IMG/VR virus record: IMGVR_UViG_3300028558_000016
Location: 1-64,000 of that record
Reading direction: 5' to 3' (one strand)
Length of the DNA stretch: 64,000 nucleotides
Position numbers and translations under genes: made by a program. Every line of letters begins with the position of its first letter. Within the stretch, counting starts at the first letter, position 1. Positions 497 to 38,972 of the stretch are shown here, in pieces. Under the pieces are notes generated by a model that was not told where the DNA came from, did not search any database, and was given only the letters and a program-made list of their open reading frames with translations.

Positions 497-1039
497 TTAA
501 TAATTTTTTAGCTTATGAATATCTTCAGGTCCGTTTAGCACAACCCAATCTCTGTCCTTAAACACAAAATGAATTGTAAGCTTTATGTCAGGCCTCTTCG
601 TCCACAGCTCAGTGAAATTCTCAATGTGTTCGATCATGTCATCAAAGAATTCTATCTCCTTAACGTCAGGATAATGCTCATCGATTATTCTTATCGCTCG
701 GTCAACCTTCTTTTTCCCGTCATACTTCAATGAATGGTGATGGAAATAAAGCTTGTTCTTCTCGAGTATTGGCATGATGTTTGGCTTTAGCCTATACATC
801 CTGTTTGTCAACACAACCTTTGCTGCAGTGTAATCCTCAGTTGCACGCATGTAATGAGGAAGTATACACTCCAACGGTTTAATGTTGAATTCAGGCATGA
901 GGCTTTCCCATCTACCCCACCAACCATTATGAGGATATGGAACACCTTTAATCCTCTCGTATTCCTTCTTCCCTTCATCGGGAAGAGGAACATCGAGAAG
1001 AGTGCCGTCCATGTCAAATATGTAAAGTTTTGTTATCAT
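497..1039 (-). CDS. HAD-family phosphatase, Swiss Army Knife RNA-repair-like HAD
   Basis: N-terminal FDMDGT motif, GWWG segment, C-terminal FFDD motif; adjacent to an RNA ligase. Confidence 0.75.
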   Translation of the reverse strand: MITKLYIFDMDGTLLDVPLPDEGKKEYERIKGVPYPHNGWWGRWESLMPEFNIKPLECILPHYMRATEDYTAAKVVLTNRMYRLKPNIMPILEKNKLYFHHHSLKYDGKKKVDRAIRIIDEHYPDVKEIEFFDDMIEHIENFTELWTKRPDIKLTIHFVFKDRDWVVLNGPEDIHKLKNY

Positions 1040-1065
1040 TTATTTCTATTTACTAATTTACTAAA

Positions 1066-2487
1066 TTAAACAATTACATTATAGCCTTTGATCAAATCGT
1101 TGTACAATTCTTTACCATCGAAATCCATCATGTATCTCTTAGAGCTTTTTGGACCTCCGATGAAATCAAAGAAGAACCCTTGGTGCTTCTTCAACTTTCT
1201 TTCTACAACAAATCTCATTACTTTTGCTGCCAACTTCTTTCTCAAGTTGGTCGCAGTTTCATCGCCTCTGTCGGAAGCACATTCTCTTATAGAAGATATT
1301 TCATCACGAGTGAATCCCAGCTTCTCAAAATCAACTGTGTCGATCTCAGCGATGTCTTTCACGTGAGTCAATCCAAGCTTAGCAAGAACATCTGCTCTCA
1401 AACCTCTCGATTCAAAAGTGATTGCATCCTTGTGCTTTCTGTATTCAATGAACTCCTCGTAAGTGGAAATTTCAGAAGTCAACTTGTCAATTTCTTTTAA
1501 AGTTCTCTTCCATCCTTCTTGCAAGTGTTCAATCTCTTCTCCTCTTCCTGGGAAAGTCGCCTTGTATTCGTTCACGTTGTCCTCACCAGATCTAACGATG
1601 TCGATCAATCTCCAGAACGCAGTTGAGTCCTTGAAGAAGTGGATTGCACAGTAAGCTGGATTCTTCATTTTTACACGAGGGTATCCAAACTCAGTATGCT
1701 TTCCATAATCACAAACAACATAACCTTCCTCACGGTAAGTCATGCCATCGAAAGACTCTTTCAATTTATCTGGAGAAGAATTCAATGCAAGAGTTGGAGC
1801 CATTGGCACACCAAGATCTTTTGATATAATCTCAAGATCAACGAAAGAAACTTCTTCCAAAGTATCAAGCTTTCTTGCACCCAACAAATAGACAGCACTG
1901 TCTTGGTGTGGTGTAACAACAATGTTGTACTTAGTACAAAGCTCAAACGCCAAAGTATATCCATCATATTTCTTAAACAAAGCTTTTACCCACTCAGTTC
2001 TAAGATCACAATGTTCCATCATTCTCACATCGTCATCTTCTCTCTTAACAGTCTCCATGAAAGCGTGAACGAACAAATCCGAGAATGTTCCTCCAAGCTT
2101 AGTATAGTGAAAGTTATCCACATCACCTTCTCCGTTAGCAGTTCCAGTTGTTCCGAAGCAAACTTCTCCTGTAACGTAATCAGTGTAAACGTGAATCATT
2201 GTTCCATCCATCTTTTTGAAGATCCTTGCAGACTCCCAGTTTATAGGTGCTGCGTGTCCTTCTCCAAGGTTGAAGAATTTTCTGAATGCAATGGACATAA
2301 CTCTCCAAGTATCTTTCTCAACTACAAGTCCTCTCGCATCTCTAACTTCCTCGTTAGTGAAGTTGGATTCGATAGAATCGTACTTAAGCAATACCTTGTG
2401 AGGATAGTCCTTGTGCTTCAATTTGAAGTCAGCAAGAGTCTTCTCAAGACCGTGCTCTTTTAGGTATTTTGTTATTGCGAGTTCCAT
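1066..2487 (-). CDS. rnl1: T4 Rnl1-like RNA ligase with C-terminal extension
   Basis: EVRDARGLVVE, AFRKFFNLGE, motif I KMDGT, AFEL, EEGYVV, RVKMK. Confidence 0.85.
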   Translation of the reverse strand: MELAITKYLKEHGLEKTLADFKLKHKDYPHKVLLKYDSIESNFTNEEVRDARGLVVEKDTWRVMSIAFRKFFNLGEGHAAPINWESARIFKKMDGTMIHVYTDYVTGEVCFGTTGTANGEGDVDNFHYTKLGGTFSDLFVHAFMETVKREDDDVRMMEHCDLRTEWVKALFKKYDGYTLAFELCTKYNIVVTPHQDSAVYLLGARKLDTLEEVSFVDLEIISKDLGVPMAPTLALNSSPDKLKESFDGMTYREEGYVVCDYGKHTEFGYPRVKMKNPAYCAIHFFKDSTAFWRLIDIVRSGEDNVNEYKATFPGRGEEIEHLQEGWKRTLKEIDKLTSEISTYEEFIEYRKHKDAITFESRGLRADVLAKLGLTHVKDIAEIDTVDFEKLGFTRDEISSIRECASDRGDETATNLRKKLAAKVMRFVVERKLKKHQGFFFDFIGGPKSSKRYMMDFDGKELYNDLIKGYNVIV

Positions 2488-2498
2488 TTCAAATATGA

Positions 2499-3023
2499 TT
2501 AGTAATGTTTACTTTTTCTTTTCTTTTTTCTACAAACAAGGTCAGCAGCGCAAGAAGCCGCGTAGGCATCTGGCTTTGATCTTACCCTGTATCCGGCAGC
2601 TCTTATGAATCCCATTCCAGAATCGTAAGCAATGTTGCTTTTCCATCTTGGATTTGGATTCAAGTCAAGGTCGATGTCAACAAGCTTCTCCATTGGAGAA
2701 ATTCTTGCATAAACCCCTTCAAGCTCCTTTTCAAGGTATTCGCCAACAGCGAAAGCTCGTTCAACTTCGCCCCAAAGCTTTGAATACATGTCCTTAGCTC
2801 TTGGAACGTTGTCAATACTGAAAATGTAGTGGGCACCTGCACCAACGTGGTATACAAGAACAACCGTTGCATAACGTGTCTTGTTTTTTTGATGCTCGGA
2901 GTCACATCCAACATAGATGCGGATTCCGTTTGGTGATGTGGACATGTGAGTCTTGATGTATTCCCTCATGTAGATACCGAGGTCATCAATGAATGCACCG
3001 CCAAATTTTTTAAAGTTTTTCAT
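2499..3023 (-). CDS. RNase H-like YkuK/DUF458 family protein
   Basis: IYVGCDS, GAGAHYIF, KLWGEV, DIDLDLN and KPDAYAASCAAD motifs. Confidence 0.8.
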   Translation of the reverse strand: MKNFKKFGGAFIDDLGIYMREYIKTHMSTSPNGIRIYVGCDSEHQKNKTRYATVVLVYHVGAGAHYIFSIDNVPRAKDMYSKLWGEVERAFAVGEYLEKELEGVYARISPMEKLVDIDLDLNPNPRWKSNIAYDSGMGFIRAAGYRVRSKPDAYAASCAADLVCRKKKRKSKHY

Positions 3024-3139
3024 TTTCGTTTCTCCTTTCTCTGTGTGTTTGTTTTAACAGCATAAAAGAGAGAAACACACGTCTCAAAATTATACCGGTT
3101 TTTATCGGTTTGTTTCTGAGAACGCGTTTGGAAACTAAT

Positions 3140-3337
3140 CTAATTCATTTCGAACCATCTTCGTTTAAACATTATTCTCAGCCTCGCGTAAGTACGAAGT
3201 CGCGACCATTTAAAATAGACGCTTTTTGTAGTCCTATTTGACCCTCGCGGGGAAACATGACCACATCTTTTTATTAGAATGTGTTCTGCACATTTTAAAT
3301 CTTCAAACTCCTTCATATTACAATCTTTAAAGTCCAT
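3140..3337 (-). CDS. Hypothetical protein
   Basis: 65 aa ORF co-oriented with neighbours; no motif recognised. Confidence 0.45.
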   Translation of the reverse strand: MDFKDCNMKEFEDLKCAEHILIKRCGHVSPRGSNRTTKSVYFKWSRLRTYARLRIMFKRRWFEMN

Positions 3338-3355
3338 TTAATATTATATATCATT

Positions 3356-3646
3356 TTAAAATAATCCATTCTCGAGTATGTCAACGTGTTTCTTCAAAAC
3401 ATCTCCGTGACAACTTGACGGTTTGCACCAACATCCTAAAGTTTTTCCTTTTAATTCTCCCAATCGATCCATCAGGTCTTTATTGTTCAAAAGGTATTCC
3501 TCGTATTTTTCAATTGCTTCCTTTCTCGAGGAAACCTTAAACTCAGCAAGAGTTCCCTCTTTATGAGAATAAGGATTTCCCCAAATGGAAGGACGTCCAA
3601 TATAGACGTCGTACTTATCTTTCTTACAGTGGACAACTTTACACAT
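3356..3646 (-). CDS. DUF4326 domain protein
   Basis: VVHCKK..DVYIGRPSIWGNPY...LKGKTLGCWCKP..CHGDVL. Confidence 0.85.
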   Translation of the reverse strand: MCKVVHCKKDKYDVYIGRPSIWGNPYSHKEGTLAEFKVSSRKEAIEKYEEYLLNNKDLMDRLGELKGKTLGCWCKPSSCHGDVLKKHVDILENGLF

Positions 3647-3657
3647 TAATTAATTTC

Positions 3658-4347
3658 TTATGCGTGCAGCTGTCTAATGTTTCCCTTGTACAACTCCTTG
3701 ATGGTTATTTTTCTTCCTGTTACGTGATCAAGAACAAAACCATCCTGTTCTCTGTAAGTTCTTCTCTTGTCGTTTCTGTTTCCATAACCGATTTGATTGA
3801 ACCTCGTCTCTTTCACCTTGGCACCTATCGCACCATCATTAATGTCCTTGAGCCTTTCTTCAAGTCGTGCCCAAGCAGTCTCTTCATTTTTTTCTCTGGT
3901 CCTGTGCTCTTCAACTCTCACTATCATTCCAGTTGGAATATGAGTCAACACGCAAACAGTTTCTACCTTGTTTCGGTTTTGACCGCCGTTACCAGATCCA
4001 CGAGTGTACTTTCGATGCACGTCGTTTCTATTTAAGACAAATTTTGGTTGGGAGTTTTCTTCCATTACAGCTACCGTCACGGTGCTGGTCTGTACTCTTC
4101 CTCTCTTTTCAGTTGGAGGAACTCTTTGCCATCTATGTCCGCCTGATTCGTTCTCAAAGAACTTCCTGACTCCGTTTCCAGTCAGTCATAGCGAGACATA
4201 ACCTGGCATTCAGTGTTCTACTGCAGAAGCAAATTGATTGATGCTTGCGGCCTTTTGATAAATGTCCGCCATTTCATTGACGAGGAGCTTTGCATCTTCT
4301 CCTCCTTCTGCTGCTCGAATTTCGAGCTTGATCTTTTCTGTTTTCAT
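3658..4347 (-). CDS. Short class I peptide chain release factor (RF1/PrfH-like, 229 aa) with two in-frame TGA codons (4210-4212, 4186-4188)
   Basis: Manual translation from ATG 4347: [22 protein letters not shown]...[52 protein letters not shown]...TRGSGNGGQNRNKVET. The RF motifs EIRAxxGG, ESGGHRxQRVP (PxT) and GGQ lie in one frame; the track ORF 3658..4080 is only the 3' part. Confidence 0.85.
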
Positions 4348-5271: not shown

Positions 5272-5297
5272 AAAAGTAAATGTAATAAAAAATTTTG

Positions 5298-5370
5298 AGC
5301 CGATGACAGGGATCGAACCTGCGACCTCCTCTTTACGAAAGAGGCGCTCTACCAGCTGAGCTACATCGGC
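5298..5370 (-). tRNA. tRNA-Thr(CGT)
   Basis: GCCGATG acceptor, GCTC/GAGC D-stem, CCTCT-TTCGTAA-AGAGG anticodon arm, GCAGG-TTCGATC-CCTGT T-arm. Confidence 0.95.
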
Positions 5371-5374
5371 AAAT

Positions 5375-5457
5375 GAAACCGAGCTTTTATTTAGGGACTT
5401 AAGGCAGGTTGCTCTGCTCTGATATTTGCCCAGGAGAATCTTACTCCTATCGGTTTC
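5375..5457 (-). ncRNA. Candidate structured small RNA (element D) in the tRNA array
   Basis: 8-bp closing stem GAAACCGA/TCGGTTTC enclosing the hairpins TAGGAG/CTCCTG and GGCA/TGCC. Confidence 0.4.
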
Positions 5458-5547
5458 TCATGGCTTGTCGTCCTGAAACATTTTGTATACAAGCCAACCC
5501 ATCACAATAACTGCAATGACAATAACTATGTAACAAAATATATCCAT
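5458..5547 (-). CDS. 29-aa single-TM micropeptide
   Basis: Manual translation MDIFCYIVIVIAVIVMGWLVYKMFQDDKP*, lying between RNA genes. Confidence 0.45.
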   Translation of the reverse strand: MDIFCYIVIVIAVIVMGWLVYKMFQDDKP

Positions 5548-5548
5548 G

Positions 5549-5634
5549 TGCAGTAGGTGAGATTCGAACTCACAACCCCCTGATTGGAAGTCAGGTGCTC
5601 TATGCTTTCGCGTCCAATTAGGAGCTACTACTGC
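5549..5634 (-). tRNA. Atypical tRNA with TCC (Gly) anticodon, enlarged D-loop, Lys/Arg-like body
   Basis: GCAGTAG/CTACTGC acceptor with A73, 21-nt D-loop containing GC-GAAA-GC, anticodon arm CCTGA-CTTCCAA-TCAGG. Confidence 0.8.
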
Positions 5635-5660
5635 AAGTGCGAACTTTCCATCGCATTAAT

Positions 5661-5720
5661 TGGAGCAACCTCAGTTAACTGATTCGCATTTCTGCGAGGG
5701 GGGAGTTAACCTCTGGTTGC
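5661..5720 (-). ncRNA. CCA-ended hairpin RNA (element A)
   Basis: GCAACC..GTTAAC..TCGCA-GAAA-TGCGA..GTTAAC..GGTTGC-T-CCA. Confidence 0.6.
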
Positions 5721-5725
5721 GTAAT

Positions 5726-5773
5726 TGGAGCCGAGGGGCCGTTCTCCAACGGTGAGTTCCCTTTCAACTCGGC
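5726..5773 (-). ncRNA. CCA-ended hairpin RNA (element B)
   Basis: GCCGAG..GGG..CCGTT-GGAG-AACGG-CCC-CTCGGC-T-CCA. Confidence 0.6.
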
Positions 5774-5778
5774 ATGTG

Positions 5779-5869
5779 CGGGGAAGATTGGAATCGAACC
5801 AATTAGTTTGATTTGCAGAAGACATTCTTTTTAAACAGAATGGTGCTCAGCCACCCGAGCATCTTCCCC
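5779..5869 (-). tRNA. Aberrant tRNA (Cys GCA-like remnant) with inserted hairpin; possible pseudo-tRNA
   Basis: GGGGAAG/CTTCCCC acceptor, GCTC/GAGC D-stem, ATTGG-TTCGATT-CCAAT T-arm. The central region has a CATTCT/AGAATG hairpin followed by CT-GCA-AA-TCAAA-CTA. Confidence 0.6.
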
Positions 5870-5874
5870 TTTTA

Positions 5875-6057
5875 TTATTTTCTCTTTCTCTCTTCGTCTA
5901 AATATCTATCATGTTCGTCTTTTGAATAGATCTCATAGTAACCACATTTTACTTTGTAATAAAATGGTGACATGTATTTCCATTCCTTGTTAACATCAAT
6001 GAATTTAGATTTTTCTAAAATCTGATTTTCCTCATCCGTCGGTTTGATTGTAATCAT
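5875..6057 (-). CDS. Hypothetical protein
   Basis: Track ORF 5875..6120; the in-frame ATG at 6057 (MITIKPT...) is the likelier start. Confidence 0.5.
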   Translation of the reverse strand: MITIKPTDEENQILEKSKFIDVNKEWKYMSPFYYKVKCGYYEIYSKDEHDRYLDEERKRK

Positions 6058-6195
6058 CGTTTTGTTTTTAGTTATTAAATAGGATGGGAAAACTTTAAGC
6101 GATAGTCTTTCGACAGGCAAGTTATTTTTTCATCGATGATTGATCAAGTCACCTCAAAATAAAATACTTTTCTACACTTCAGCACTTTCCCTCTG

Positions 6196-6268
6196 AGCGG
6201 AAAACGGGGCTCGAACCCGCGACCTTAACCTTGGCAAGGTTACGCTCTACCAACTGAGCTATTTCCGC
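6196..6268 (-). tRNA. tRNA-Gly(GCC)
   Basis: GCGGAAA acceptor, U73, TAACC-TTGCCAA-GGTTA; canonical cloverleaf. Confidence 0.95.
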
Positions 6269-6269
6269 A

Positions 6270-6400
6270 TGGTGCAGTGTAATTAAAAGGGTTGGACTTA
6301 TCTTCCATTCGTCAATGGCTCTTACCAACTTTCGATGTCACGATTAATTTTAAGCGCAAAACGATTCTATTGTCGAATTTTCTATTTGCGCCGACACTGC
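6270..6400 (-). ncRNA. 131-nt multi-stem RNA with 7-bp acceptor-like stem and ACCA end (element C)
   Basis: GCAGTGT/ACACTGC-A-CCA closing; internal stems GCGCAAA/TTTGCGC, AATTAA/TTAATT, GTTGG/CCAAC, CCATT-GACG-AATGG. Confidence 0.6.
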
Positions 6401-6407
6401 ATTTTTG

Positions 6408-6480
6408 AGCGGGAGACGAGGTTCGAACTCGCGACCTATAGCTTGGAAGGCTATCGCTCTACCAACTGAGCTACTCCCGC
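6408..6480 (-). tRNA. tRNA-Gly(TCC)
   Basis: GCGGGAG acceptor, U73, ATAGC-CTTCCAA-GCTAT; canonical. Confidence 0.95.
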
Positions 6481-6518
6481 GTGCGGACATTGTTTCGGGT
6501 ACAACGTCCAAAACCTAA

Positions 6519-6592
6519 TGGGGCCAGGATCGAACTCGCGTCCGACGAATGGAAGCTAATGAGGCCATCCAAACCGCTCATTATCGCCTGGC
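6519..6592 (-). ncRNA. 74-nt CCA-ended tRNA-like RNA lacking canonical arms (element E)
   Basis: GCCAGG/CCTGGC-C-CCA closing, TAATGAG/CTCATTA hairpin, GAGTTCGATC T-loop-like motif without a T-stem. Confidence 0.55.
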
Positions 6593-6645
6593 ATTTGTTG
6601 ATGATACACAACATTATATACCGACTGTATAAAAATGTTTTAATG

Positions 6646-6718
6646 TGACCCCGGTGGGGATCGAACCCACAACCACCTGATTAAGAGTCAGGAGCTCCAC
6701 CAATTGAGCTACAGAGTC
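6646..6718 (-). tRNA. tRNA-Lys(CTT)
   Basis: GACTCTG/CGGGGTC acceptor, CCTGA-CTCTTAA-TCAGG. Confidence 0.95.
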
Positions 6719-6748
6719 ATTTTGTTGATGCAATACGTCAAAGATCGT

Positions 6749-6973
6749 TCATTTCATGAAAAGATGTTTAATTCTTTCCATATCTACTTCAATAGTTTTA
6801 ATGTTCAACTTCTCTCCAGTCTTTTTAAAATGATCATACCAAAGTCTAACCTTTTCAGATTTTATTATCTGACCATTATAATTTTTCCTTTTCAACCATT
6901 CCTTTCCAAAATATAAAATTCGTTTTTCTGTTATTCTCGAATTCATTATATGTTTAAAAACTTTTTCAATCAT
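6749..6973 (-). CDS. Hypothetical protein within the tRNA array
   Basis: 74 aa ORF fitting exactly between two tRNAs. Confidence 0.55.
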   Translation of the reverse strand: MIEKVFKHIMNSRITEKRILYFGKEWLKRKNYNGQIIKSEKVRLWYDHFKKTGEKLNIKTIEVDMERIKHLFMK

Positions 6974-6974
6974 G

Positions 6975-7059
6975 TAGCGCTGGTGAGACTCGAACTCACA
7001 CTACCGTTAAGGAACCCGCTTATGAGGCGGGCACAATTACCACATCTGTTCACAGCGCT
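6975..7059 (-). tRNA. tRNA with CAT anticodon on a class II (long variable arm) scaffold
   Basis: AGCGCTG/CAGCGCT, A73, CCCGC-CTCATAA-GCGGG, 15-nt variable region, GTGAG-TTCGAGT-CTCAC. Confidence 0.85.
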
Positions 7060-7101
7060 ATCTCGTCTGCTTCTTTGTAGGCCCCGTACTATATCTACAA
7101 A

Positions 7102-7371
7102 TCATTTGGTGGGGCTGTCGGAAACAGCAGACTTTACTTTATTTTCTTTCTTATACGTCTTCAAGAATTCCAAAGCATTTTGCAATTCTTCGACCCTGTT
7201 CTTGTTAGAAGGAATGCTTCCATTTGCCTGTCTAACAGTCATCGGATCCGATGACGATAAATTCTTTTCAAAGAACTCTAAATTTCTTTCTTCCATTAAG
7301 AGTCTTTCTCTTAATAATTTTGCCACGTATGGCATCGGATCATATTGTCCTCTTTCTTCTTGTGTCTTCAT
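7102..7371 (-). CDS. Hypothetical protein within the tRNA array
   Basis: 89 aa ORF starting 2 nt after the CCA of the upstream tRNA. Confidence 0.6.
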   Translation of the reverse strand: MKTQEERGQYDPMPYVAKLLRERLLMEERNLEFFEKNLSSSDPMTVRQANGSIPSNKNRVEELQNALEFLKTYKKENKVKSAVSDSPTK

Positions 7372-7372
7372 T

Positions 7373-7464
7373 TGGTGCGCCCGGAGGGATTCGAACCCCC
7401 GTTGGTGTTATTCACACGTCTGATTAAAAGTCAGGACCATTCGGCCAGCTATGGGAACGGACGC
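7373..7464 (-). tRNA. tRNA with TTT (Lys) anticodon and long variable arm
   Basis: GCGTCCG/CGGGCGC-A-CCA, CTGA-CTTTTAA-TCAG, V-arm GTGT-GAATA-ACAC, GGGGG-TTCGAAT-CCCTC. Confidence 0.85.
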
Positions 7465-7478
7465 ATTTGTTTTTATTG

Positions 7479-7552
7479 TGCGCCCGGTTGGGTTCGAACC
7501 AACGACCCCCTGATTAAAAGTCAGGTGCATCTACCAGCTGAGCTACGAGCGC
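7479..7552 (-). tRNA. tRNA-Lys(TTT)
   Basis: GCGCTCG/CGGGCGC, CCTGA-CTTTTAA-TCAGG; canonical. Confidence 0.95.
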
Positions 7553-7774
7553 AAATATTTGGATATGGAAATCCTCTTGCATCTCGTATTTCAGCGAGAT
7601 GCCTTTACCGTTTATATTTCATTTTAGTTTTCATTATCATTATATTTTTTAAAAGAACAGAATACGTTTTTTACCTTTTCATTAAAATTGAAATGCTCGT
7701 TAGAGCTTGTTTGTTTTGCTGTACGTATTCTTTTTTCTTTTTAATTTCTACCACCATTCAGGATGCTTTTGTTT

Positions 7775-7880
7775 TGGCAAAGATTGGATTCGAACCAATG
7801 ACCTCTCGTTTACTTTCCTTAACAATGTTTCCATTGACGGGGATTTCAGGCGAGCGCTCTACCAACTGAGCTACTTATCC
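7775..7880 (-). tRNA. tRNA-Phe(GAA) with a 33-nt insertion after position 37 (intron-like)
   Basis: Standard D- and T-arms. Anticodon arm CTCG-C-CT-GAA-A-[33 nt including CAATG-GAAA-CATTG]-A-A-CGAG; the acceptor stem has two mismatches. Confidence 0.7.
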
Positions 7881-7908
7881 TTTTGTAATGCTGCATGCAT
7901 CCTTTTTG

Positions 7909-7981
7909 AGCCGAGAACCGGGGTCGAACCGGTGACCTTCCGCTTACAAGGCGGGTGCTCTACCAACTGAGCTATCTCGGC
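7909..7981 (-). tRNA. tRNA-Thr(TGT)
   Basis: GCCGAGA/TCTCGGC, CCCGC-CTTGTAA-GCGGA. Confidence 0.95.
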
Positions 7982-7984
7982 AAT

Positions 7985-8119
7985 TTACAAATATTCGTTC
8001 TTGTTACACTCAAAAAACAAAACCCACAACTCGTGAATTCTCTCATTCACTTCATCATTTCCATTTTGTCTCTTGTTTAACAAAGACATCAATTCGTTTA
8101 CTATGTCATCCTTTTTCAT
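7985..8119 (-). CDS. 44-aa hypothetical protein between Thr tRNAs
   Basis: Manual translation MKKDDIVNELMSLLNKRQNGNDEVNERIHELWVLFFECNKNEYL*. Confidence 0.45.
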   Translation of the reverse strand: MKKDDIVNELMSLLNKRQNGNDEVNERIHELWVLFFECNKNEYL

Positions 8120-8122
8120 TTG

Positions 8123-8195
8123 AGCCTACAACCGGGATCGAACCGGTCACCTCATCCTTACCAAGGATGTGTTCTACCAACTGAACTATGTGGGC
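8123..8195 (-). tRNA. tRNA-Thr(GGT)
   Basis: GCCCACA/TGTAGGC, CATCC-TTGGTAA-GGATG. Confidence 0.95.
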
Positions 8196-8317
8196 AATGT
8201 CTCCGATCGTAAAAATAATCTCTCAAATATTATCAAGATCATTTCCATTCTTTATTAAGCGGTCGGACACGCTACTACTAAATCCAAAAGTTGCAACTTC
8301 TGAATTTTTCATCTTTG

Positions 8318-8413
8318 AAGCGGGAGTGAGATTCGAACTCACGTTCTCTTTCGAGTTGAGGCTTATGAGGCCCTGCTGGCGTTTTGCAACTTCCATCTCC
8401 AGTCGATCCCGCA
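8318..8413 (-). tRNA. Initiator-like tRNA(CAT) with expanded D-loop and a V-arm
   Basis: T1:T72 mismatch plus GCGGGA/TCCCGC, D-stem CTGG/CCAG with long loop, GGGC-CTCATAA-GCCT, V-arm CTC-GAAA-GAG. Confidence 0.75.
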
Positions 8414-8419
8414 ATGTGT

Positions 8420-8541
8420 GCCGCTTCCTGGACCCTATCACCAGGATTTTCTTTGGACTACAGAAGAGAGATTCGCCAATTTTTTTCCATAGAATTAAAC
8501 CATATACGGCGCTTTTCTACACTCTCAACTTTCGCAAGCGG
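8420..8541 (-). ncRNA. Candidate structured RNA (element F)
   Basis: Closing CCGCT/AGCGG; internal GAGAG/CTCTC, CGCCG/TGGCG and TCCTGG/CCAGGA stems. Confidence 0.4.
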
Positions 8542-8552
8542 ACTTTTATTTG

Positions 8553-8624
8553 TAGCGGGAGATGGATTCGAACCACCGACCTCAGGGTTATGAGCCCTGC
8601 GAGCTACCCCTGCTCTATCCCGCA
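8553..8624 (-). tRNA. tRNA-fMet(CAT)
   Basis: 1:72 mismatch, three consecutive G-C pairs in the anticodon stem (CAGGG-CTCATAA-CCCTG), A73. Confidence 0.95.
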
Positions 8625-37777: not shown

Positions 37778-37986
37778 TTGTCAAGTTTATATTTTTCGGT
37801 TAACCATCCTTTTAAAAACCACCCTGTAAAATATCCGCCAATTCCCGACATAATCCATCCGAGCCACATTGGATCTATTGGAGTTGCTATCACAAAAAGC
37901 GTAGCAATCAGAAATAGGAAAAACATATTTTTATATTGCCACTTCATTTTTTTAATTCGTTTGCAAATATTTGACGTTGAGCCCAA
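37765..37986 (-). CDS. Small membrane protein
   Basis: Hydrophobic ORF; start probably at MKWQY. Confidence 0.5.
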   Translation of the reverse strand: MGSTSNICKRIKKMKWQYKNMFFLFLIATLFVIATPIDPMWLGWIMSGIGGYFTGWFLKGWLTEKYKLDKWNR

Positions 37987-38972
37987 TGTCCATGTTTTAT
38001 CTCAAATCCTTTGCTAACGAACTTAGCAACTGATTTTCTGAATTCACCATAGGAAAATTCATCGGCAATCCTTATAACATATCCCTCACATTTATTTCCA
38101 TCAATCTCTGATTTAAACAATGTTTTTATTTTTTCTTCATCGAATATTCCTCTGTATAAAACTGGAACTGTATTAAGCCCAAGAAGCTCAGCATATTCTA
38201 AGGTCTCATCCCATGATAGACAAACATTCTTTTCGTTCCACATAGAAAACATGTAAAAATAACTTTCGAGATTCTTGTATGGAATTGTGTGTATTGCATA
38301 CATGTCCTCTCCACACAATCTCCATCCTTCAGGAATTTCATAAGCAATCTTTCCCCAAAGACCTTTCACCCATTTCTTAGATGGGTGAGAATTGTGTTCA
38401 AGAGATCTTGCGTGAATGTGATCTCTGTACATGGAAGTATTTTCCCCATCCAGCTTCACAGTCACAACAACTTCTTTTCCTTCAAAATGTTTTGTTGATT
38501 CTAATTTTCTGTCATCCTTGGTCATCTTCTCAGTCCATGGAAGATGCATTGTTCTCGGATATTTGACATACTTTGAAAACAGATCCAACACCTTTCCTTG
38601 CTCGAGAATCTTTTGGACTGACTCATCATAGAACAGTTCTCCTCTCACCCTTGTTCCATTCGGCATGATTAAATTTCCCCATTTGTCGTAGGTATAATCA
38701 TTGTCGTTGTACAGGTGTGATGGTAACACGACTTCCTTGATGCCCGTTGCCTCTCTGATTTCTTCGCAGGAAAGGGTGGTCTGTTCTGCCTCTATATGAT
38801 GCGTTTGACAAAGAGACGCACCGTTAGATAGGTAGTAACCTCCATCATCGAATAACCTTCTTTCAATTATGTGATGAGCATCTTTTGCTGGTTGTTTGCA
38901 TATAACACATTGATGGGAATCCCTTTTAAAGACTCCCTCTCTGAATTCATCTCGTGTTAATAGCTTTTCCAT
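37944..38972 (-). CDS. RNA ligase family protein with N-terminal HNH-like domain
   Basis: N-terminus CVIC..DAHHI..NGASLC..HH; C-terminus KYPRTMHLPW, KLDGEN, GEDMY, EGYVIR, AKFV. Confidence 0.8.
   Translation of the reverse strand: MEKLLTRDEFREGVFKRDSHQCVICKQPAKDAHHIIERRLFDDGGYYLSNGASLCQTHHIEAEQTTLSCEEIREATGIKEVVLPSHLYNDNDYTYDKWGNLIMPNGTRVRGELFYDESVQKILEQGKVLDLFSKYVKYPRTMHLPWTEKMTKDDRKLESTKHFEGKEVVVTVKLDGENTSMYRDHIHARSLEHNSHPSKKWVKGLWGKIAYEIPEGWRLCGEDMYAIHTIPYKNLESYFYMFSMWNEKNVCLSWDETLEYAELLGLNTVPVLYRGIFDEEKIKTLFKSEIDGNKCEGYVIRIADEFSYGEFRKSVAKFVSKGFEIKHGHWAQRQIFANELKK

What the first reader, a model, noticed from the sequence alone, without database searches (positions are those of the whole stretch)
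6519..6592. tRNA-sized RNA E with CCA end and an orphan T-loop motif
Seen: 74 nt, GCCAGG/CCTGGC-C-CCA, a 7-bp TAATGAG/CTCATTA hairpin and GAGTTCGATC abutting the acceptor 3' strand with no T-stem. It could be a rearranged tRNA derivative or a decoy. A small GGACGTTGT/ACAATGTCC hairpin follows at about 6485-6509.
Basis: partly seen in the sequence, partly recalled or inferred. Interest (0 to 1): 0.62.

Follow-up and report, generated by a model that had tools for sequence, protein, structure and literature searches.

The report
Conserved tRNA-mimic RNA in phage array
A 74-base RNA gene among the tRNA genes of a giant uncultured phage is real and strongly conserved in five related phages, but it is not a tRNA: it keeps a tRNA-like end helix with a CCA tail on a body of its own, so it is most likely a tRNA look-alike with a non-decoding job.

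Summary
All the quoted motifs are there. The element lies between tRNA-Lys(CUU) and tRNA-Gly(UCC) in the tRNA array of a 482-kb T4-like phage contig.

I found homologues in four other phage lineages, always in that slot.

The RNA is 94-100% identical across lineages, against 61-100% for the neighbouring real tRNAs.

The 'orphan T-loop' is not a T-loop. Its letters occur only in the window copy. They are the 3' strand of a 7-bp helix (P3) with an invariant GCGA tetraloop. Three P3 pairs show changes on both sides and every cell stays paired.

P3 stacks directly on the 6-bp terminal helix (P1). This gives a 13-bp acceptor/T-arm-like minihelix with an N-C-C(A) tail.

ARAGORN in all modes and 4227 Rfam models find nothing here.

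Best reading: a tRNA-derived, non-decoding tRNA mimic, analogous to T4's RNAC/RNAD. Its function is inferred, not shown.

The parts
6519..6592 (-). RNA E, the whole conserved unit (74 nt: P1-J-P2-J-P3-P1' plus C-CCA)
   Evidence: Conserved block in 5 phage lineages (alignment A5). Covariance-model hits of 98-112 bits occur only at these sites.
6587..6592 (-). P1 5' strand GCCAGG (acceptor-like)
   Evidence: Pairs with 6523-6528. Invariant in all lineages. In L049 the first pair becomes G:U. Conservation stops exactly at its outer edge.
6577..6583 (-). P2 5' strand UAAUGAG (contains AUG). In the rival fold it is the loop of a 2-bp mini-stem.
   Evidence: Seven perfect pairs with 6557-6563. Invariant apart from the loss of the first U in L049. 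No covariation is available to test it.
6564..6576 (-). L2 loop CGGUUUGGAUGGC. In the rival fold, the 5' strand of a long bulged arm.
   Evidence: The first 9 nt are invariant. The only variable positions (alignment columns 25, 27, 30) fall on the bulge and closing pair of the rival arm.
6557..6563 (-). P2 3' strand CUCAUUA. In the rival fold, a 7-nt anticodon-loop-like loop (C32 U33 CAU U37 A38).
   Evidence: Invariant in all 5 lineages. 6 of 7 letters match the CUCAUAA loops of the array's CAU tRNAs.
6547..6556 (-). J2/3 linker GCUUCCAUUC
   Evidence: Invariant in all 5 lineages. In the rival fold it is the 3' strand of the long arm.
6529..6546 (-). P3: 7-bp helix GUCGGAC / GUUCGAU capped by a GCGA tetraloop (6536-6539).
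   Evidence: 100% of cells are paired in 5 sequences. Three pairs change on both sides and one on one side; the tetraloop is invariant. The competing T-stem reading is only 72% paired and has one pair that is always mismatched.
6523..6528 (-). P1 3' strand CCUGGC, directly continuous with the P3 3' strand (no linker)
   Evidence: Read directly from the sequence. P1 and P3 together form a 13-bp stack interrupted only on the 5' strand, by 40-41 nt, as in a tRNA (nt 8-48).
6519..6522 (-). 3' tail C-CCA
   Evidence: The tail after P1 reads C-CCA (window), U-CCA (L049), A-CCCA (L003, L007) and C-CCCA (L017). So N-C-C is in register in 5 of 5 and CCA in 2 of 5. Only 1 of 12 tRNA genes of the array encodes CCA; 10 have N73-CA.
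6485..6509 (-). Downstream 9-bp hairpin with loop ACCCGAA, preceded by GGUUUUG
   Evidence: z = -2.19. Identical in L049. In L007 three pairs change on both sides and the loop is the same. Absent from L003 and L017, so it is an accessory, not part of the core.
6613..6625 (-). Upstream GTCGGTATATAAT motif (-10-like TATAAT/TATAAG), 5-37 nt before G1 depending on the lineage
   Evidence: Present upstream of RNA E in all 5 lineages at variable distance. It occurs once in the window. A promoter role is inferred only.
6645..6718 (-). tRNA-Lys(CUU), the constant upstream neighbour
   Evidence: ARAGORN and Rfam calls. Same neighbour in L003, L007, L017 and L049.
6407..6480 (-). tRNA-Gly(UCC), the constant downstream neighbour

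Best explanation
RNA E is a functional, strongly conserved small RNA gene of a clade of T4-like huge phages. It was probably derived from a tRNA(CAU)-like gene of the same array and no longer decodes.

Shown:
- The two ends pair (P1, 6 bp).
- The 3'-proximal hairpin P3 (7 bp, GCGA tetraloop) abuts P1 with no linker. Together they make one 13-bp helix with a single-stranded N-C-C(A) tail.
- This is the geometry of a tRNA acceptor/T-arm minihelix. The 40-41-nt insert sits exactly where a tRNA carries nt 8-48.

Inferred:
- It is made with the tRNAs of the array, possibly from its own TATAAT-like element.
- RNase P cuts its 5' end before G1 (U at -1 in 4 of 5 lineages, a G1:C pair, an NCC tail).
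- It carries a genome-encoded CCA because it lacks the T/D-loop elbow that the CCA-adding enzyme uses.
- It then occupies or titrates a factor that recognises tRNA acceptor ends, either host or phage. Candidates are processing or repair enzymes, a synthetase, or a tRNA-targeting defence nuclease or transferase.
- The near-invariant central 40 nt supply the specificity.
For: Conservation:
- Five lineages carry it in the same slot, Lys(CUU) - RNA E - Gly(UCC).
- Flanking proteins are only 63-71% identical. The core is 94-100% identical, against 61-100% for eight true tRNAs of the same array. The spacers around it do not align.

Structure:
- 12 core alignment columns vary. Seven lie in P3 and all keep pairing (3 pairs changed on both sides). 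One is a P1 G:C to G:U change.
- The given structure is 99.2% paired. Only 3 of 500 column shuffles reach that, or the covariation score. Slid controls reach at most 52%.
- RNAalifold, run before L049 was found (4-sequence alignment A3), independently returned P1, P2 and P3.

Tail:
- The N-C-C(A) tail is conserved, while 10 of 12 neighbouring tRNA genes encode only N73-CA.

Not coding:
- 1-nt indels occur in the core (columns 10 and 25) and in the tail (column 75), and every P3 substitution changes the would-be codon (by reading).

Context:
- The array sits beside an RNA-repair and translation-rescue cluster: an Rnl1-type ligase, a weak match to the HAD domain of 'Swiss Army Knife' RNA repair proteins (Pfam HAD_SAK_1), and an RF-1-domain protein.
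- Phage tRNA arrays are documented anti-defence loci (PMC13096335).

Ancestry:
- It is colinear with the tRNA(CAU)-like gene at 8320-8412 and with the T arm of tRNA-Gly(UCC); 0 of 500 shuffles reach either score.
Against: - No expression data. The 5' and 3' ends are inferred.
- There are only 4 distinct sequences. P1 and P2 are invariant and therefore untested by covariation.
- The counting tool warns that related sequences can beat its shuffles without any structure.
- CCA is in register in only 2 of 5 lineages; the others have an extra C.
- The stack is 13 bp, not 12, and lacks the T-loop that RNase P and the CCA-adding enzyme normally read.
- The central fold is ambiguous.
- The similarity to tRNA in the T region is strong only in the window copy, so part of it may be chance.
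- No partner protein has been identified.
Confidence: 0.6

Rival explanations
1. A purely cis-acting element of the polycistronic tRNA precursor. It would be a structured spacer that guides or punctuates processing or transcription (an RNase P, E or III entry site, or an insulator) and has no function of its own once released.
For: - Always embedded between two tRNAs on the same strand.
- An accessory hairpin lies just before tRNA-Gly in 3 lineages.
- No trans target was found in the window.
Against: - About 50 loop and linker positions are invariant, and identity is higher than for true tRNAs. That is more constraint than a spacer helix needs.
- The element keeps its own TATAAT-like motif and a CCA-type tail.
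- Distances to both neighbours vary from 14 nt to about 700 nt (homing-endonuclease insertion in L003) without changing the element.
Confidence: 0.15
2. A non-canonical but decoding tRNA(CAU) (Met or Ile2-type). It would use the rival cloverleaf-like fold: P1, a 2-bp D-like stem, a long bulged anticodon arm with the loop CUCAUUA, and P3 in place of the T arm.
For: - The rival fold is isoenergetic with the P2 fold in the window copy (-24.1 both). It is within about 1 kcal/mol in three lineages and better by 3.5 kcal/mol in L049.
- The loop has C32, U33 and CAU.
- The array holds several other odd tRNAs.
- The length and CCA tail fit a tRNA.
Against: - No T-loop or D-loop elbow.
- U at position 37.
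- In L049 the closing pair is lost and the arm shifts register, which leaves a 10-nt loop.
- ARAGORN in bacterial, mitochondrial and armless modes finds nothing in the 4 homologues tested; L049 was found later and not re-run.
- The tRNA model gives no hit even when only the 164-nt spacer is searched at E<=10.
- The 7-nt loop is perfectly complementary to an invariant upstream strand, which would mask it.
Confidence: 0.07
3. A small ligand-binding RNA or self-cleaving ribozyme (a three-way junction with conserved loops) that happens to lie in the tRNA array.
For: - Invariant junctions and loops, a GNRA tetraloop, and two competing central folds that could act as a switch.
Against: - No match to any of 4227 Rfam families at E<=10.
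- No downstream ORF to regulate; the next gene is a tRNA.
- The one loop-linker pseudoknot that could coexist with P2 is weakened in L049.
Confidence: 0.06
4. A recently decayed tRNA pseudogene, or a short protein-coding ORF.
For: - tRNA-like fragments in the window copy.
- A 17-codon AUG frame can be read through the element, and a 55-codon ORF lies on the opposite strand.
Against: - It is more conserved than the functional tRNAs around it.
- The substitutions are compensatory in RNA terms.
- The homologues are not tRNAs.
- 1-nt indels break any reading frame.
Confidence: 0.02

Closest known systems
Phage T4 small stable RNAs RNAC (species 1) and RNAD (species 2)
   Same: - Encoded inside the tRNA cluster of a T4-type phage, on the tRNA strand, next to a GIY-YIG homing endonuclease gene.
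- Tens to about 140 nt long and carrying tRNA-like pieces. RNAD ends in ACCA and RNAC contains a T arm (read).
- Biological role still unknown (PMC3014915, PMC9697503).
   Different: - No sequence or structure homology: the RNA E model scores below 9 bits across the T4 tRNA region.
- RNA E is shorter (74 nt against 119 and 139).
- It has no T-loop, and has the P1-P3 minihelix instead.
Canonical tRNA (Rfam RF00005)
   Same: - Length of 74 nt and a place in a tRNA array.
- Paired 5' and 3' ends with an NCC(A) tail.
- The 3' strand of the end helix runs straight into the next helix.
- A 40-41-nt insert in place of nt 8-48.
- A possible CAU loop.
   Different: - No D arm, no 5-bp anticodon stem and no T-loop (positions 54-55 vary: UU, UC, CC, GU).
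- Helix lengths of 6+7 bp instead of 7+5.
- Not detected by any tRNA finder.
Acceptor-T-arm minihelix substrates of RNase P, the CCA-adding enzyme and some synthetases (from my own knowledge of the RNase P literature; see also PMC12710915 on RCCA-dependent cleavage of non-tRNA substrates)
   Same: - A continuous helix of about 12-13 bp closed by a loop.
- A single-stranded NCCA 3' end, with G+1 and U-1.
   Different: - RNA E carries a large, conserved insert in the 5' strand.
- The match is in shape only. No processing has been shown.
Armless mitochondrial tRNAs and bacterial pseudo-tRNAs such as Bacillus cereus tRNA-Other (PMC12013499, PMC3399842)
   Same: tRNA-derived RNAs that have lost canonical arms. 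Some work outside translation.
   Different: - ARAGORN's mitochondrial and armless modes do not recognise RNA E.
- RNA E keeps full tRNA length.

Membership tests
tRNA (RF00005) | Scores at or above the family threshold (29 bits) with the tRNA covariance model, or is called by ARAGORN | tested here: not met
   No tRNA-clan hit over RNA E at E<=10, neither in a 4.4-kb search nor when only the 164-nt spacer was searched, nor in L049. ARAGORN finds none in the 4 homologues tested.
tRNA (RF00005) | T arm: a 5-bp stem plus a loop with invariant T54, Psi55 and C56 | tested here: not met
   The T-stem reading is 72% paired and one pair is mismatched in all 5 sequences. Positions 54-55 would read UU, UC, CC and GU.
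tRNA (RF00005) | Anticodon arm: a 5-bp stem and a 7-nt loop with U33 and a purine at 37 | tested here: inconclusive
   A CUCAUUA loop on a bulged 7-bp arm is energetically possible. But it has U37, only 3 loop-proximal pairs, a register shift and a 10-nt loop in L049, and no covariation.
Armless or mitochondrial-type tRNA | Detected by ARAGORN -mt or -mtmam (D- or T-replacement loops) | tested here: not met
   No genes found in the 4 homologues tested. Lowering the threshold gives only inconsistent calls.
Decayed tRNA pseudogene | Homologues are intact tRNAs, or the locus evolves neutrally | tested here: not met
   All 4 other lineages have the same non-tRNA form. Identity is 94-100%, against 61-100% for neighbouring tRNAs.
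T4 RNAC/RNAD | Small RNA gene inside a T4-type phage tRNA cluster | tested here: met
T4 RNAC/RNAD | Sequence or structure homology to rnaC or rnaD | tested here: not met
   The RNA E model scores at most 8.8 bits across the T4 tRNA region with filters off.
T4 RNAC/RNAD | Accumulates as a stable processed RNA | not testable with these tools
   No transcript data are available.
Acceptor/T-arm minihelix mimic (a functional class) | The end helix and the 3' hairpin are continuous on the 3' strand, about 12 bp in all | tested here: met
   P1 (6 bp) plus P3 (7 bp) with zero linker. P3 is proven by covariation, and P1 is kept by a G:U change.
Acceptor/T-arm minihelix mimic (a functional class) | Single-stranded 3' NCCA in register | tested here: inconclusive
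   N-C-C is in register in 5 of 5 lineages. CCA is in register in 2 of 5, and 3 of 5 have one extra C.
Acceptor/T-arm minihelix mimic (a functional class) | Cleaved by RNase P, or bound by tRNA-end enzymes | not testable with these tools
   This needs biochemistry.
tmRNA | tRNA-like domain with a T arm and G3:U70, plus a tag reading frame | tested here: not met
   ARAGORN finds no tmRNA. Pair 3:70 is C:G. The only Rfam hint is an 11.5-bit hit to the permuted tmRNA family (threshold 47) that spans the tRNA-Lys 3' end and only the first 13 nt of RNA E.

The most novel reading that the evidence does not exclude
RNA E is a bistable tRNA mimic. In one state an anticodon-like CUCAUUA loop (CAU) is displayed on a long arm. 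In the other it is masked by perfect pairing with an internal UAAUGAG strand that contains the AUG codon. The minihelix end with its encoded CCA lets it enter tRNA pathways. There it would act as a switchable decoy or inhibitor for a factor that reads CAU tRNAs or tRNA 3' ends, such as a host anticodon nuclease, a 3'-end-modifying toxin, TilS or MetRS. That would be a new kind of phage counter-defence RNA.
Probability: 0.1. Interest if true: 0.8.

Novelty: new variant of a known kind. Interest (0 to 1): 0.55.

Why it matters
Phage tRNA arrays are now seen as anti-defence loci. Yet the non-tRNA small RNAs that sit in them have had no known role for fifty years; T4's RNAC and RNAD are the classic case.

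RNA E is an independent second example, and it has two advantages:
- Its architecture is cleaner: a covariation-supported minihelix with an encoded CCA, plus an almost invariant 40-nt specificity domain.
- It is under stronger purifying selection than the real tRNAs beside it.

That makes it a small, synthesisable object for asking what such tRNA look-alikes do. It also shows that tRNA finders and Rfam miss a class of conserved genes in huge-phage genomes.

Tried and rejected
Searches that found no further homologues:
- GenBank phages, by megablast and blastn. Only the neighbouring tRNAs match.
- Exact or degenerate DNA patterns in IMG/VR, JGI metagenomes and GTDB genomes. Together these gave the five lineages and nothing else.
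- The loosest pattern returned 15 viral and 48 bacterial contigs. Apart from the three RNA E contigs already known, they are unrelated coding sequences or chance matches, and the model scores none of them significantly.

Searches through flanking proteins:
- Relatives of the 195-aa flank protein at 37-62% identity have no tRNA array and no RNA E.
- The 74-aa array protein has only two clusters in the database.
- The 160-aa UVR-motif protein has about 20 relatives, but their contigs break before the array.

Other checks:
- No paralogue anywhere in the 64-kb window, with filters off.
- L2/J2-3 pseudoknot (GGAAUGG with CCAUUC): all letters are invariant in 4 sequences, one pair is broken in L049, and the 4-nt crossing loop is sterically tight. 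Not supported.
- T-armless tRNA with anticodon UCG: one pair is always mismatched, and the 'anticodon' would change to UCA in L017.
- T-arm reading: rejected.
- Antisense targets of the loop or the linker in the window: no more than chance.
- The GTCGGTATATAA motif as a repeated phage promoter: it occurs only once in the window. The sigma-70 and terminator scans gave no call at the element.

Full report
**Where it is.** The window is one end of IMG/VR contig IMGVR_UViG_3300028558_000016, 482 kb long. It is a T4-like huge phage with a clamp loader, portal, DnaB-type helicase, Dda-type helicase, thymidylate synthase and an Rnl1-type RNA ligase. Its G+C content is 36.5%. A tRNA array of 11-13 genes lies on the minus strand at 5297-8624. 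The finding sits in the 164-nt gap between tRNA-Lys(CUU) (6645-6718) and tRNA-Gly(UCC) (6407-6480).

**The observation.**
- GCCAGG pairs with CCUGGC, followed by C-CCA.
- UAAUGAG pairs with CUCAUUA around 13 nt.
- GAGUUCGAUC abuts CCUGGC.
- A 9-bp hairpin lies at 6509-6485.

ARAGORN and Rfam's gathering search miss the element. So does an E<=10 Rfam search of the array, and one restricted to the spacer alone. The single-sequence folding energy is unremarkable, z = -0.70. The case therefore rests on comparison with relatives.

**Homologues.** Protein-anchored and DNA-pattern searches found the element in four more phage lineages:
- L003 (IMGVR_UViG_3300032053_000382)
- L007 (Logan SRR28494108)
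- L017 (Ga0315286_10538668)
- L049 (IMGVR_UViG_3300037010_001305)

In all of them it lies after tRNA-Lys(CUU). In the four lineages whose DNA reaches that far it lies before tRNA-Gly(UCC). Identical copies of the window version occur in three other samples, so it is not an assembly artefact.

The flanking proteins of these phages are 63-71% identical to the window's. The RNA E core is 94% identical between the window and L003 or L007, and 100% between L003 and L007. Eight bona fide tRNAs of the same array range from 61 to 100%, mostly 74-91%. The surrounding spacers do not align. None of the homologues is a tRNA.

**Structure that is established.** In the 5-sequence alignment A5, 12 of the 71 core columns vary.
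- Seven are in helix P3 (columns 48-54 with 59-65), and every cell stays paired.
- The P3 pair types are G:U/A:U; G:C/G:U/A:U; A:U/G:C/U:G; and C:G/U:A/U:G. Three pairs change on both sides.
- The GCGA tetraloop is invariant.
- P1 keeps pairing through a G:C to G:U change in L049.
- Overall 99.2% of cells are paired. Only 3 of 500 column shuffles reach that, or the covariation score. Sliding the partners gives at most 52%.
- The tool warns that relatedness can inflate these numbers, and there are only four distinct sequences. I therefore treat P3 as well supported and P1 as supported by position and by the wobble change.
- RNAalifold, run on the earlier 4-sequence alignment A3 before L049 was found, independently returned P1, P2 and P3.

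**The 'orphan T-loop'.** GAGUUCGAUC exists only in the window copy. The others read GAAUCCGAUC, GAGCCCGAUC and GAGGUCGAUC. A T-stem reading (GCGAG with CUGGC) is 72% paired, one pair is mismatched in all five, and there is no covariation. The letters are the tetraloop plus the 3' strand of P3. There is a stem here, though not a T-stem.

**Why it still looks like a tRNA end.**
- P3's 3' strand runs directly into P1's 3' strand. P1 and P3 therefore form one 13-bp stack, broken only on the 5' side by 40-41 nt. This is the topology of the acceptor/T-arm stack (7+5 bp, with nt 8-48 inserted).
- After P1 the tail is C-CCA (window), U-CCA (L049), A-CCCA (L003, L007) and C-CCCA (L017). N-C-C is in register in all five and CCA in two.
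- The base before G1 is U in four lineages and A in one.
- Ten of the twelve tRNA genes in the window's array carry only N73-CA, and just one encodes CCA. The full CCA of RNA E therefore looks selected. My inference is that an RNA without the T/D elbow would be a poor substrate for the CCA-adding enzyme, so it must encode its own tail.

**The centre is unresolved.** The 40 nt between P1 and P3 are almost invariant, so covariation cannot help.
- Fold B is cloverleaf-like. It has a 2-bp mini-stem (C7:G18, G8:C17). It also has a long bulged arm (G19:C46; UGGA/UCCA; GGC/GCU) that presents CUCAUUA as a 7-nt loop with C32, U33, CAU, U37 and A38.
- With P1 and P3 fixed, A and B are isoenergetic in the window copy (-24.1 kcal/mol). 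A wins by about 1 kcal/mol in L003, L007 and L017. B wins by 3.5 kcal/mol in L049.
- The only variable loop positions (columns 25, 27, 30) are the bulge and closing pair of the fold-B arm.
- In L049 that arm shifts register and its loop grows to 10 nt. This argues against a decoding anticodon loop.
- The two folds exclude each other, because P2's 5' strand (which contains AUG) pairs with the whole CUCAUUA loop.
- A loop-linker pseudoknot that I considered is weakened in L049 and is sterically tight.

**Ancestry.** The window copy aligns colinearly, from the CUCAUUA region to the 'T arm', with the uncalled tRNA(CAU)-like gene at 8320-8412. It also aligns with the T arm of tRNA-Gly(UCC). None of 500 shuffles reaches either score (alignment A6). 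The invariant letters GCGA...CGAUCC are the T-arm-like ones, while 'G53, T54, Psi55' have been freed to covary within P3. I read this as descent from a tRNA gene followed by remodelling. The evidence is moderate, because the similarity is weaker in the other lineages.

**What it is not.**
- Not coding: 1-nt indels occur in the core and the tail, and all P3 substitutions would be non-synonymous.
- Not any Rfam family.
- Not a tmRNA or an armless tRNA.
- Not homologous to T4 rnaC or rnaD.
- Not repeated elsewhere in the window.

**Mechanism, with its status marked.**
- Shown: a conserved gene under strong purifying selection, P3, the P1-P3 stack, and the NCC(A) tail.
- Inferred: co-expression with the tRNAs or from its own TATAAT/TATAAG element, which lies 5-37 nt upstream in all five lineages. 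Also inferred are RNase P maturation at G1 and a stable RNA of about 74 nt that engages a tRNA-end-binding factor, with the invariant centre giving specificity.
- Context fits a tRNA damage-and-repair arms race. An Rnl1-type ligase, a weak HAD 'Swiss Army Knife' RNA-repair domain match (Pfam HAD_SAK_1) and an RF-1-domain (ArfB-like) protein lie just downstream. The array holds duplicate and odd Lys(UUU) and CAU tRNAs. GIY-YIG-like endonuclease genes sit beside the element in L003 and L049, as segB does in T4/T6, where the tRNA array is an anti-defence locus (PMC13096335).
- The closest known analogues, T4 RNAC and RNAD, are likewise of unknown role (PMC3014915, PMC9697503).

**Verdict.** This is a real and, as far as these libraries show, undescribed small-RNA family, so far limited to five lineages of one huge-phage clade. 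It is a tRNA-derived mimic rather than a tRNA or a pseudogene. The 'T-loop' reading is wrong. The 'rearranged tRNA derivative / decoy' reading is partly supported as to origin and untested as to function.

Noticed in passing
window 8320-8412 (-): A tRNA(CAU)-like gene that neither ARAGORN nor Rfam calls in the window. It has an expanded D region and a variable arm capped by GAAA. Its homologue in L003 (6335-6421) is called tRNA-Met, 87 nt. It is the array member most similar to RNA E.
   Followed up: partly
window 7775-7880 (-), 7373-7464 (-), 6974-7059 (-), 5549-5634 (-): Several non-canonical tRNAs, all conserved in L003 and L007:
- a 106-nt Rfam tRNA hit with an insert of about 35 nt;
- a 92-nt Lys(UUU) with a long variable arm and an encoded CCA, next to a normal Lys(UUU);
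- an 86-nt Met(CAU);
- a tRNA with an insert in its D loop and anticodon UCC on a Lys-like body.
   Followed up: no
window 5778-5869 (-): A 92-nt tRNA-like gene. ARAGORN calls it Asn(GTT). Rfam's best match is tRNA-Sec at 23.5 bits, below threshold. By eye the anticodon stem has 6 pairs and closes an 8-nt loop GUUUAAAA, so its decoding identity is unclear. It could be a suppressor or frameshift type.
   Followed up: no
window 5297-8624 (-): Ten of the 12 tRNA genes are followed by CA directly after the discriminator (N73-CA). Only the odd Lys(UUU) and RNA E encode a full CCA.
   Followed up: partly
window 497-4080 (-) and 37944-38972 (-): An RNA-repair and translation-rescue cluster lies next to the array:
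- a weak match (23.4 bits, cut-off 25.6) to the HAD domain of 'Swiss Army Knife' RNA repair proteins (Pfam HAD_SAK_1);
- an Rnl1-type RNA ligase;
- an RNaseH_like protein (PF04308);
- DUF4326;
- a 140-aa RF-1-domain (ArfB-like) protein.
A second ligase, of Rnl2 type, lies at 37.9 kb. In L007 the syntenic cluster also has a 2'-5' RNA ligase/Acb1-like gene and a cREC_REC gene.
   Followed up: partly
window 6485-6509 (-); L007:2930-2956; L049:11362-11386: A 9-bp hairpin with the conserved loop ACCCGAA, preceded by GGUUUUG, 3-4 nt before tRNA-Gly(UCC). L007 has three pairs changed on both sides. L003 and L017 have a different spacer. Its role is unknown; it may be a processing signal.
   Followed up: partly
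L003:8285-8881; L049:11516-12145; L007:3350-3631: Mobile-endonuclease-like ORFs inserted in the array beside RNA E. Two are GIY-YIG-like (E = 3e-4 and 9e-4, just under Pfam's cut-off). One looks HNH-like by eye but has no Pfam hit. This parallels segB in the T4 tRNA cluster.
   Followed up: partly
window about 5655-5720 (-); L003:9409-9450: A G+C-rich segment (GCAACCAGAGGUUAACUCCCC ... AGUUAACUGAGGUUGC) between two tRNA-like genes. It is partly conserved in L003 and able to form a long imperfect hairpin. No tool called it.
   Followed up: no
L110, L112, L114 (contigs of relatives): Assemblies of related phages repeatedly end within about 0.5 kb after the 160-aa UVR-motif gene, just before the tRNA array. 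The array seems to be an assembly breakpoint, which hides such RNAs from surveys.
   Followed up: no
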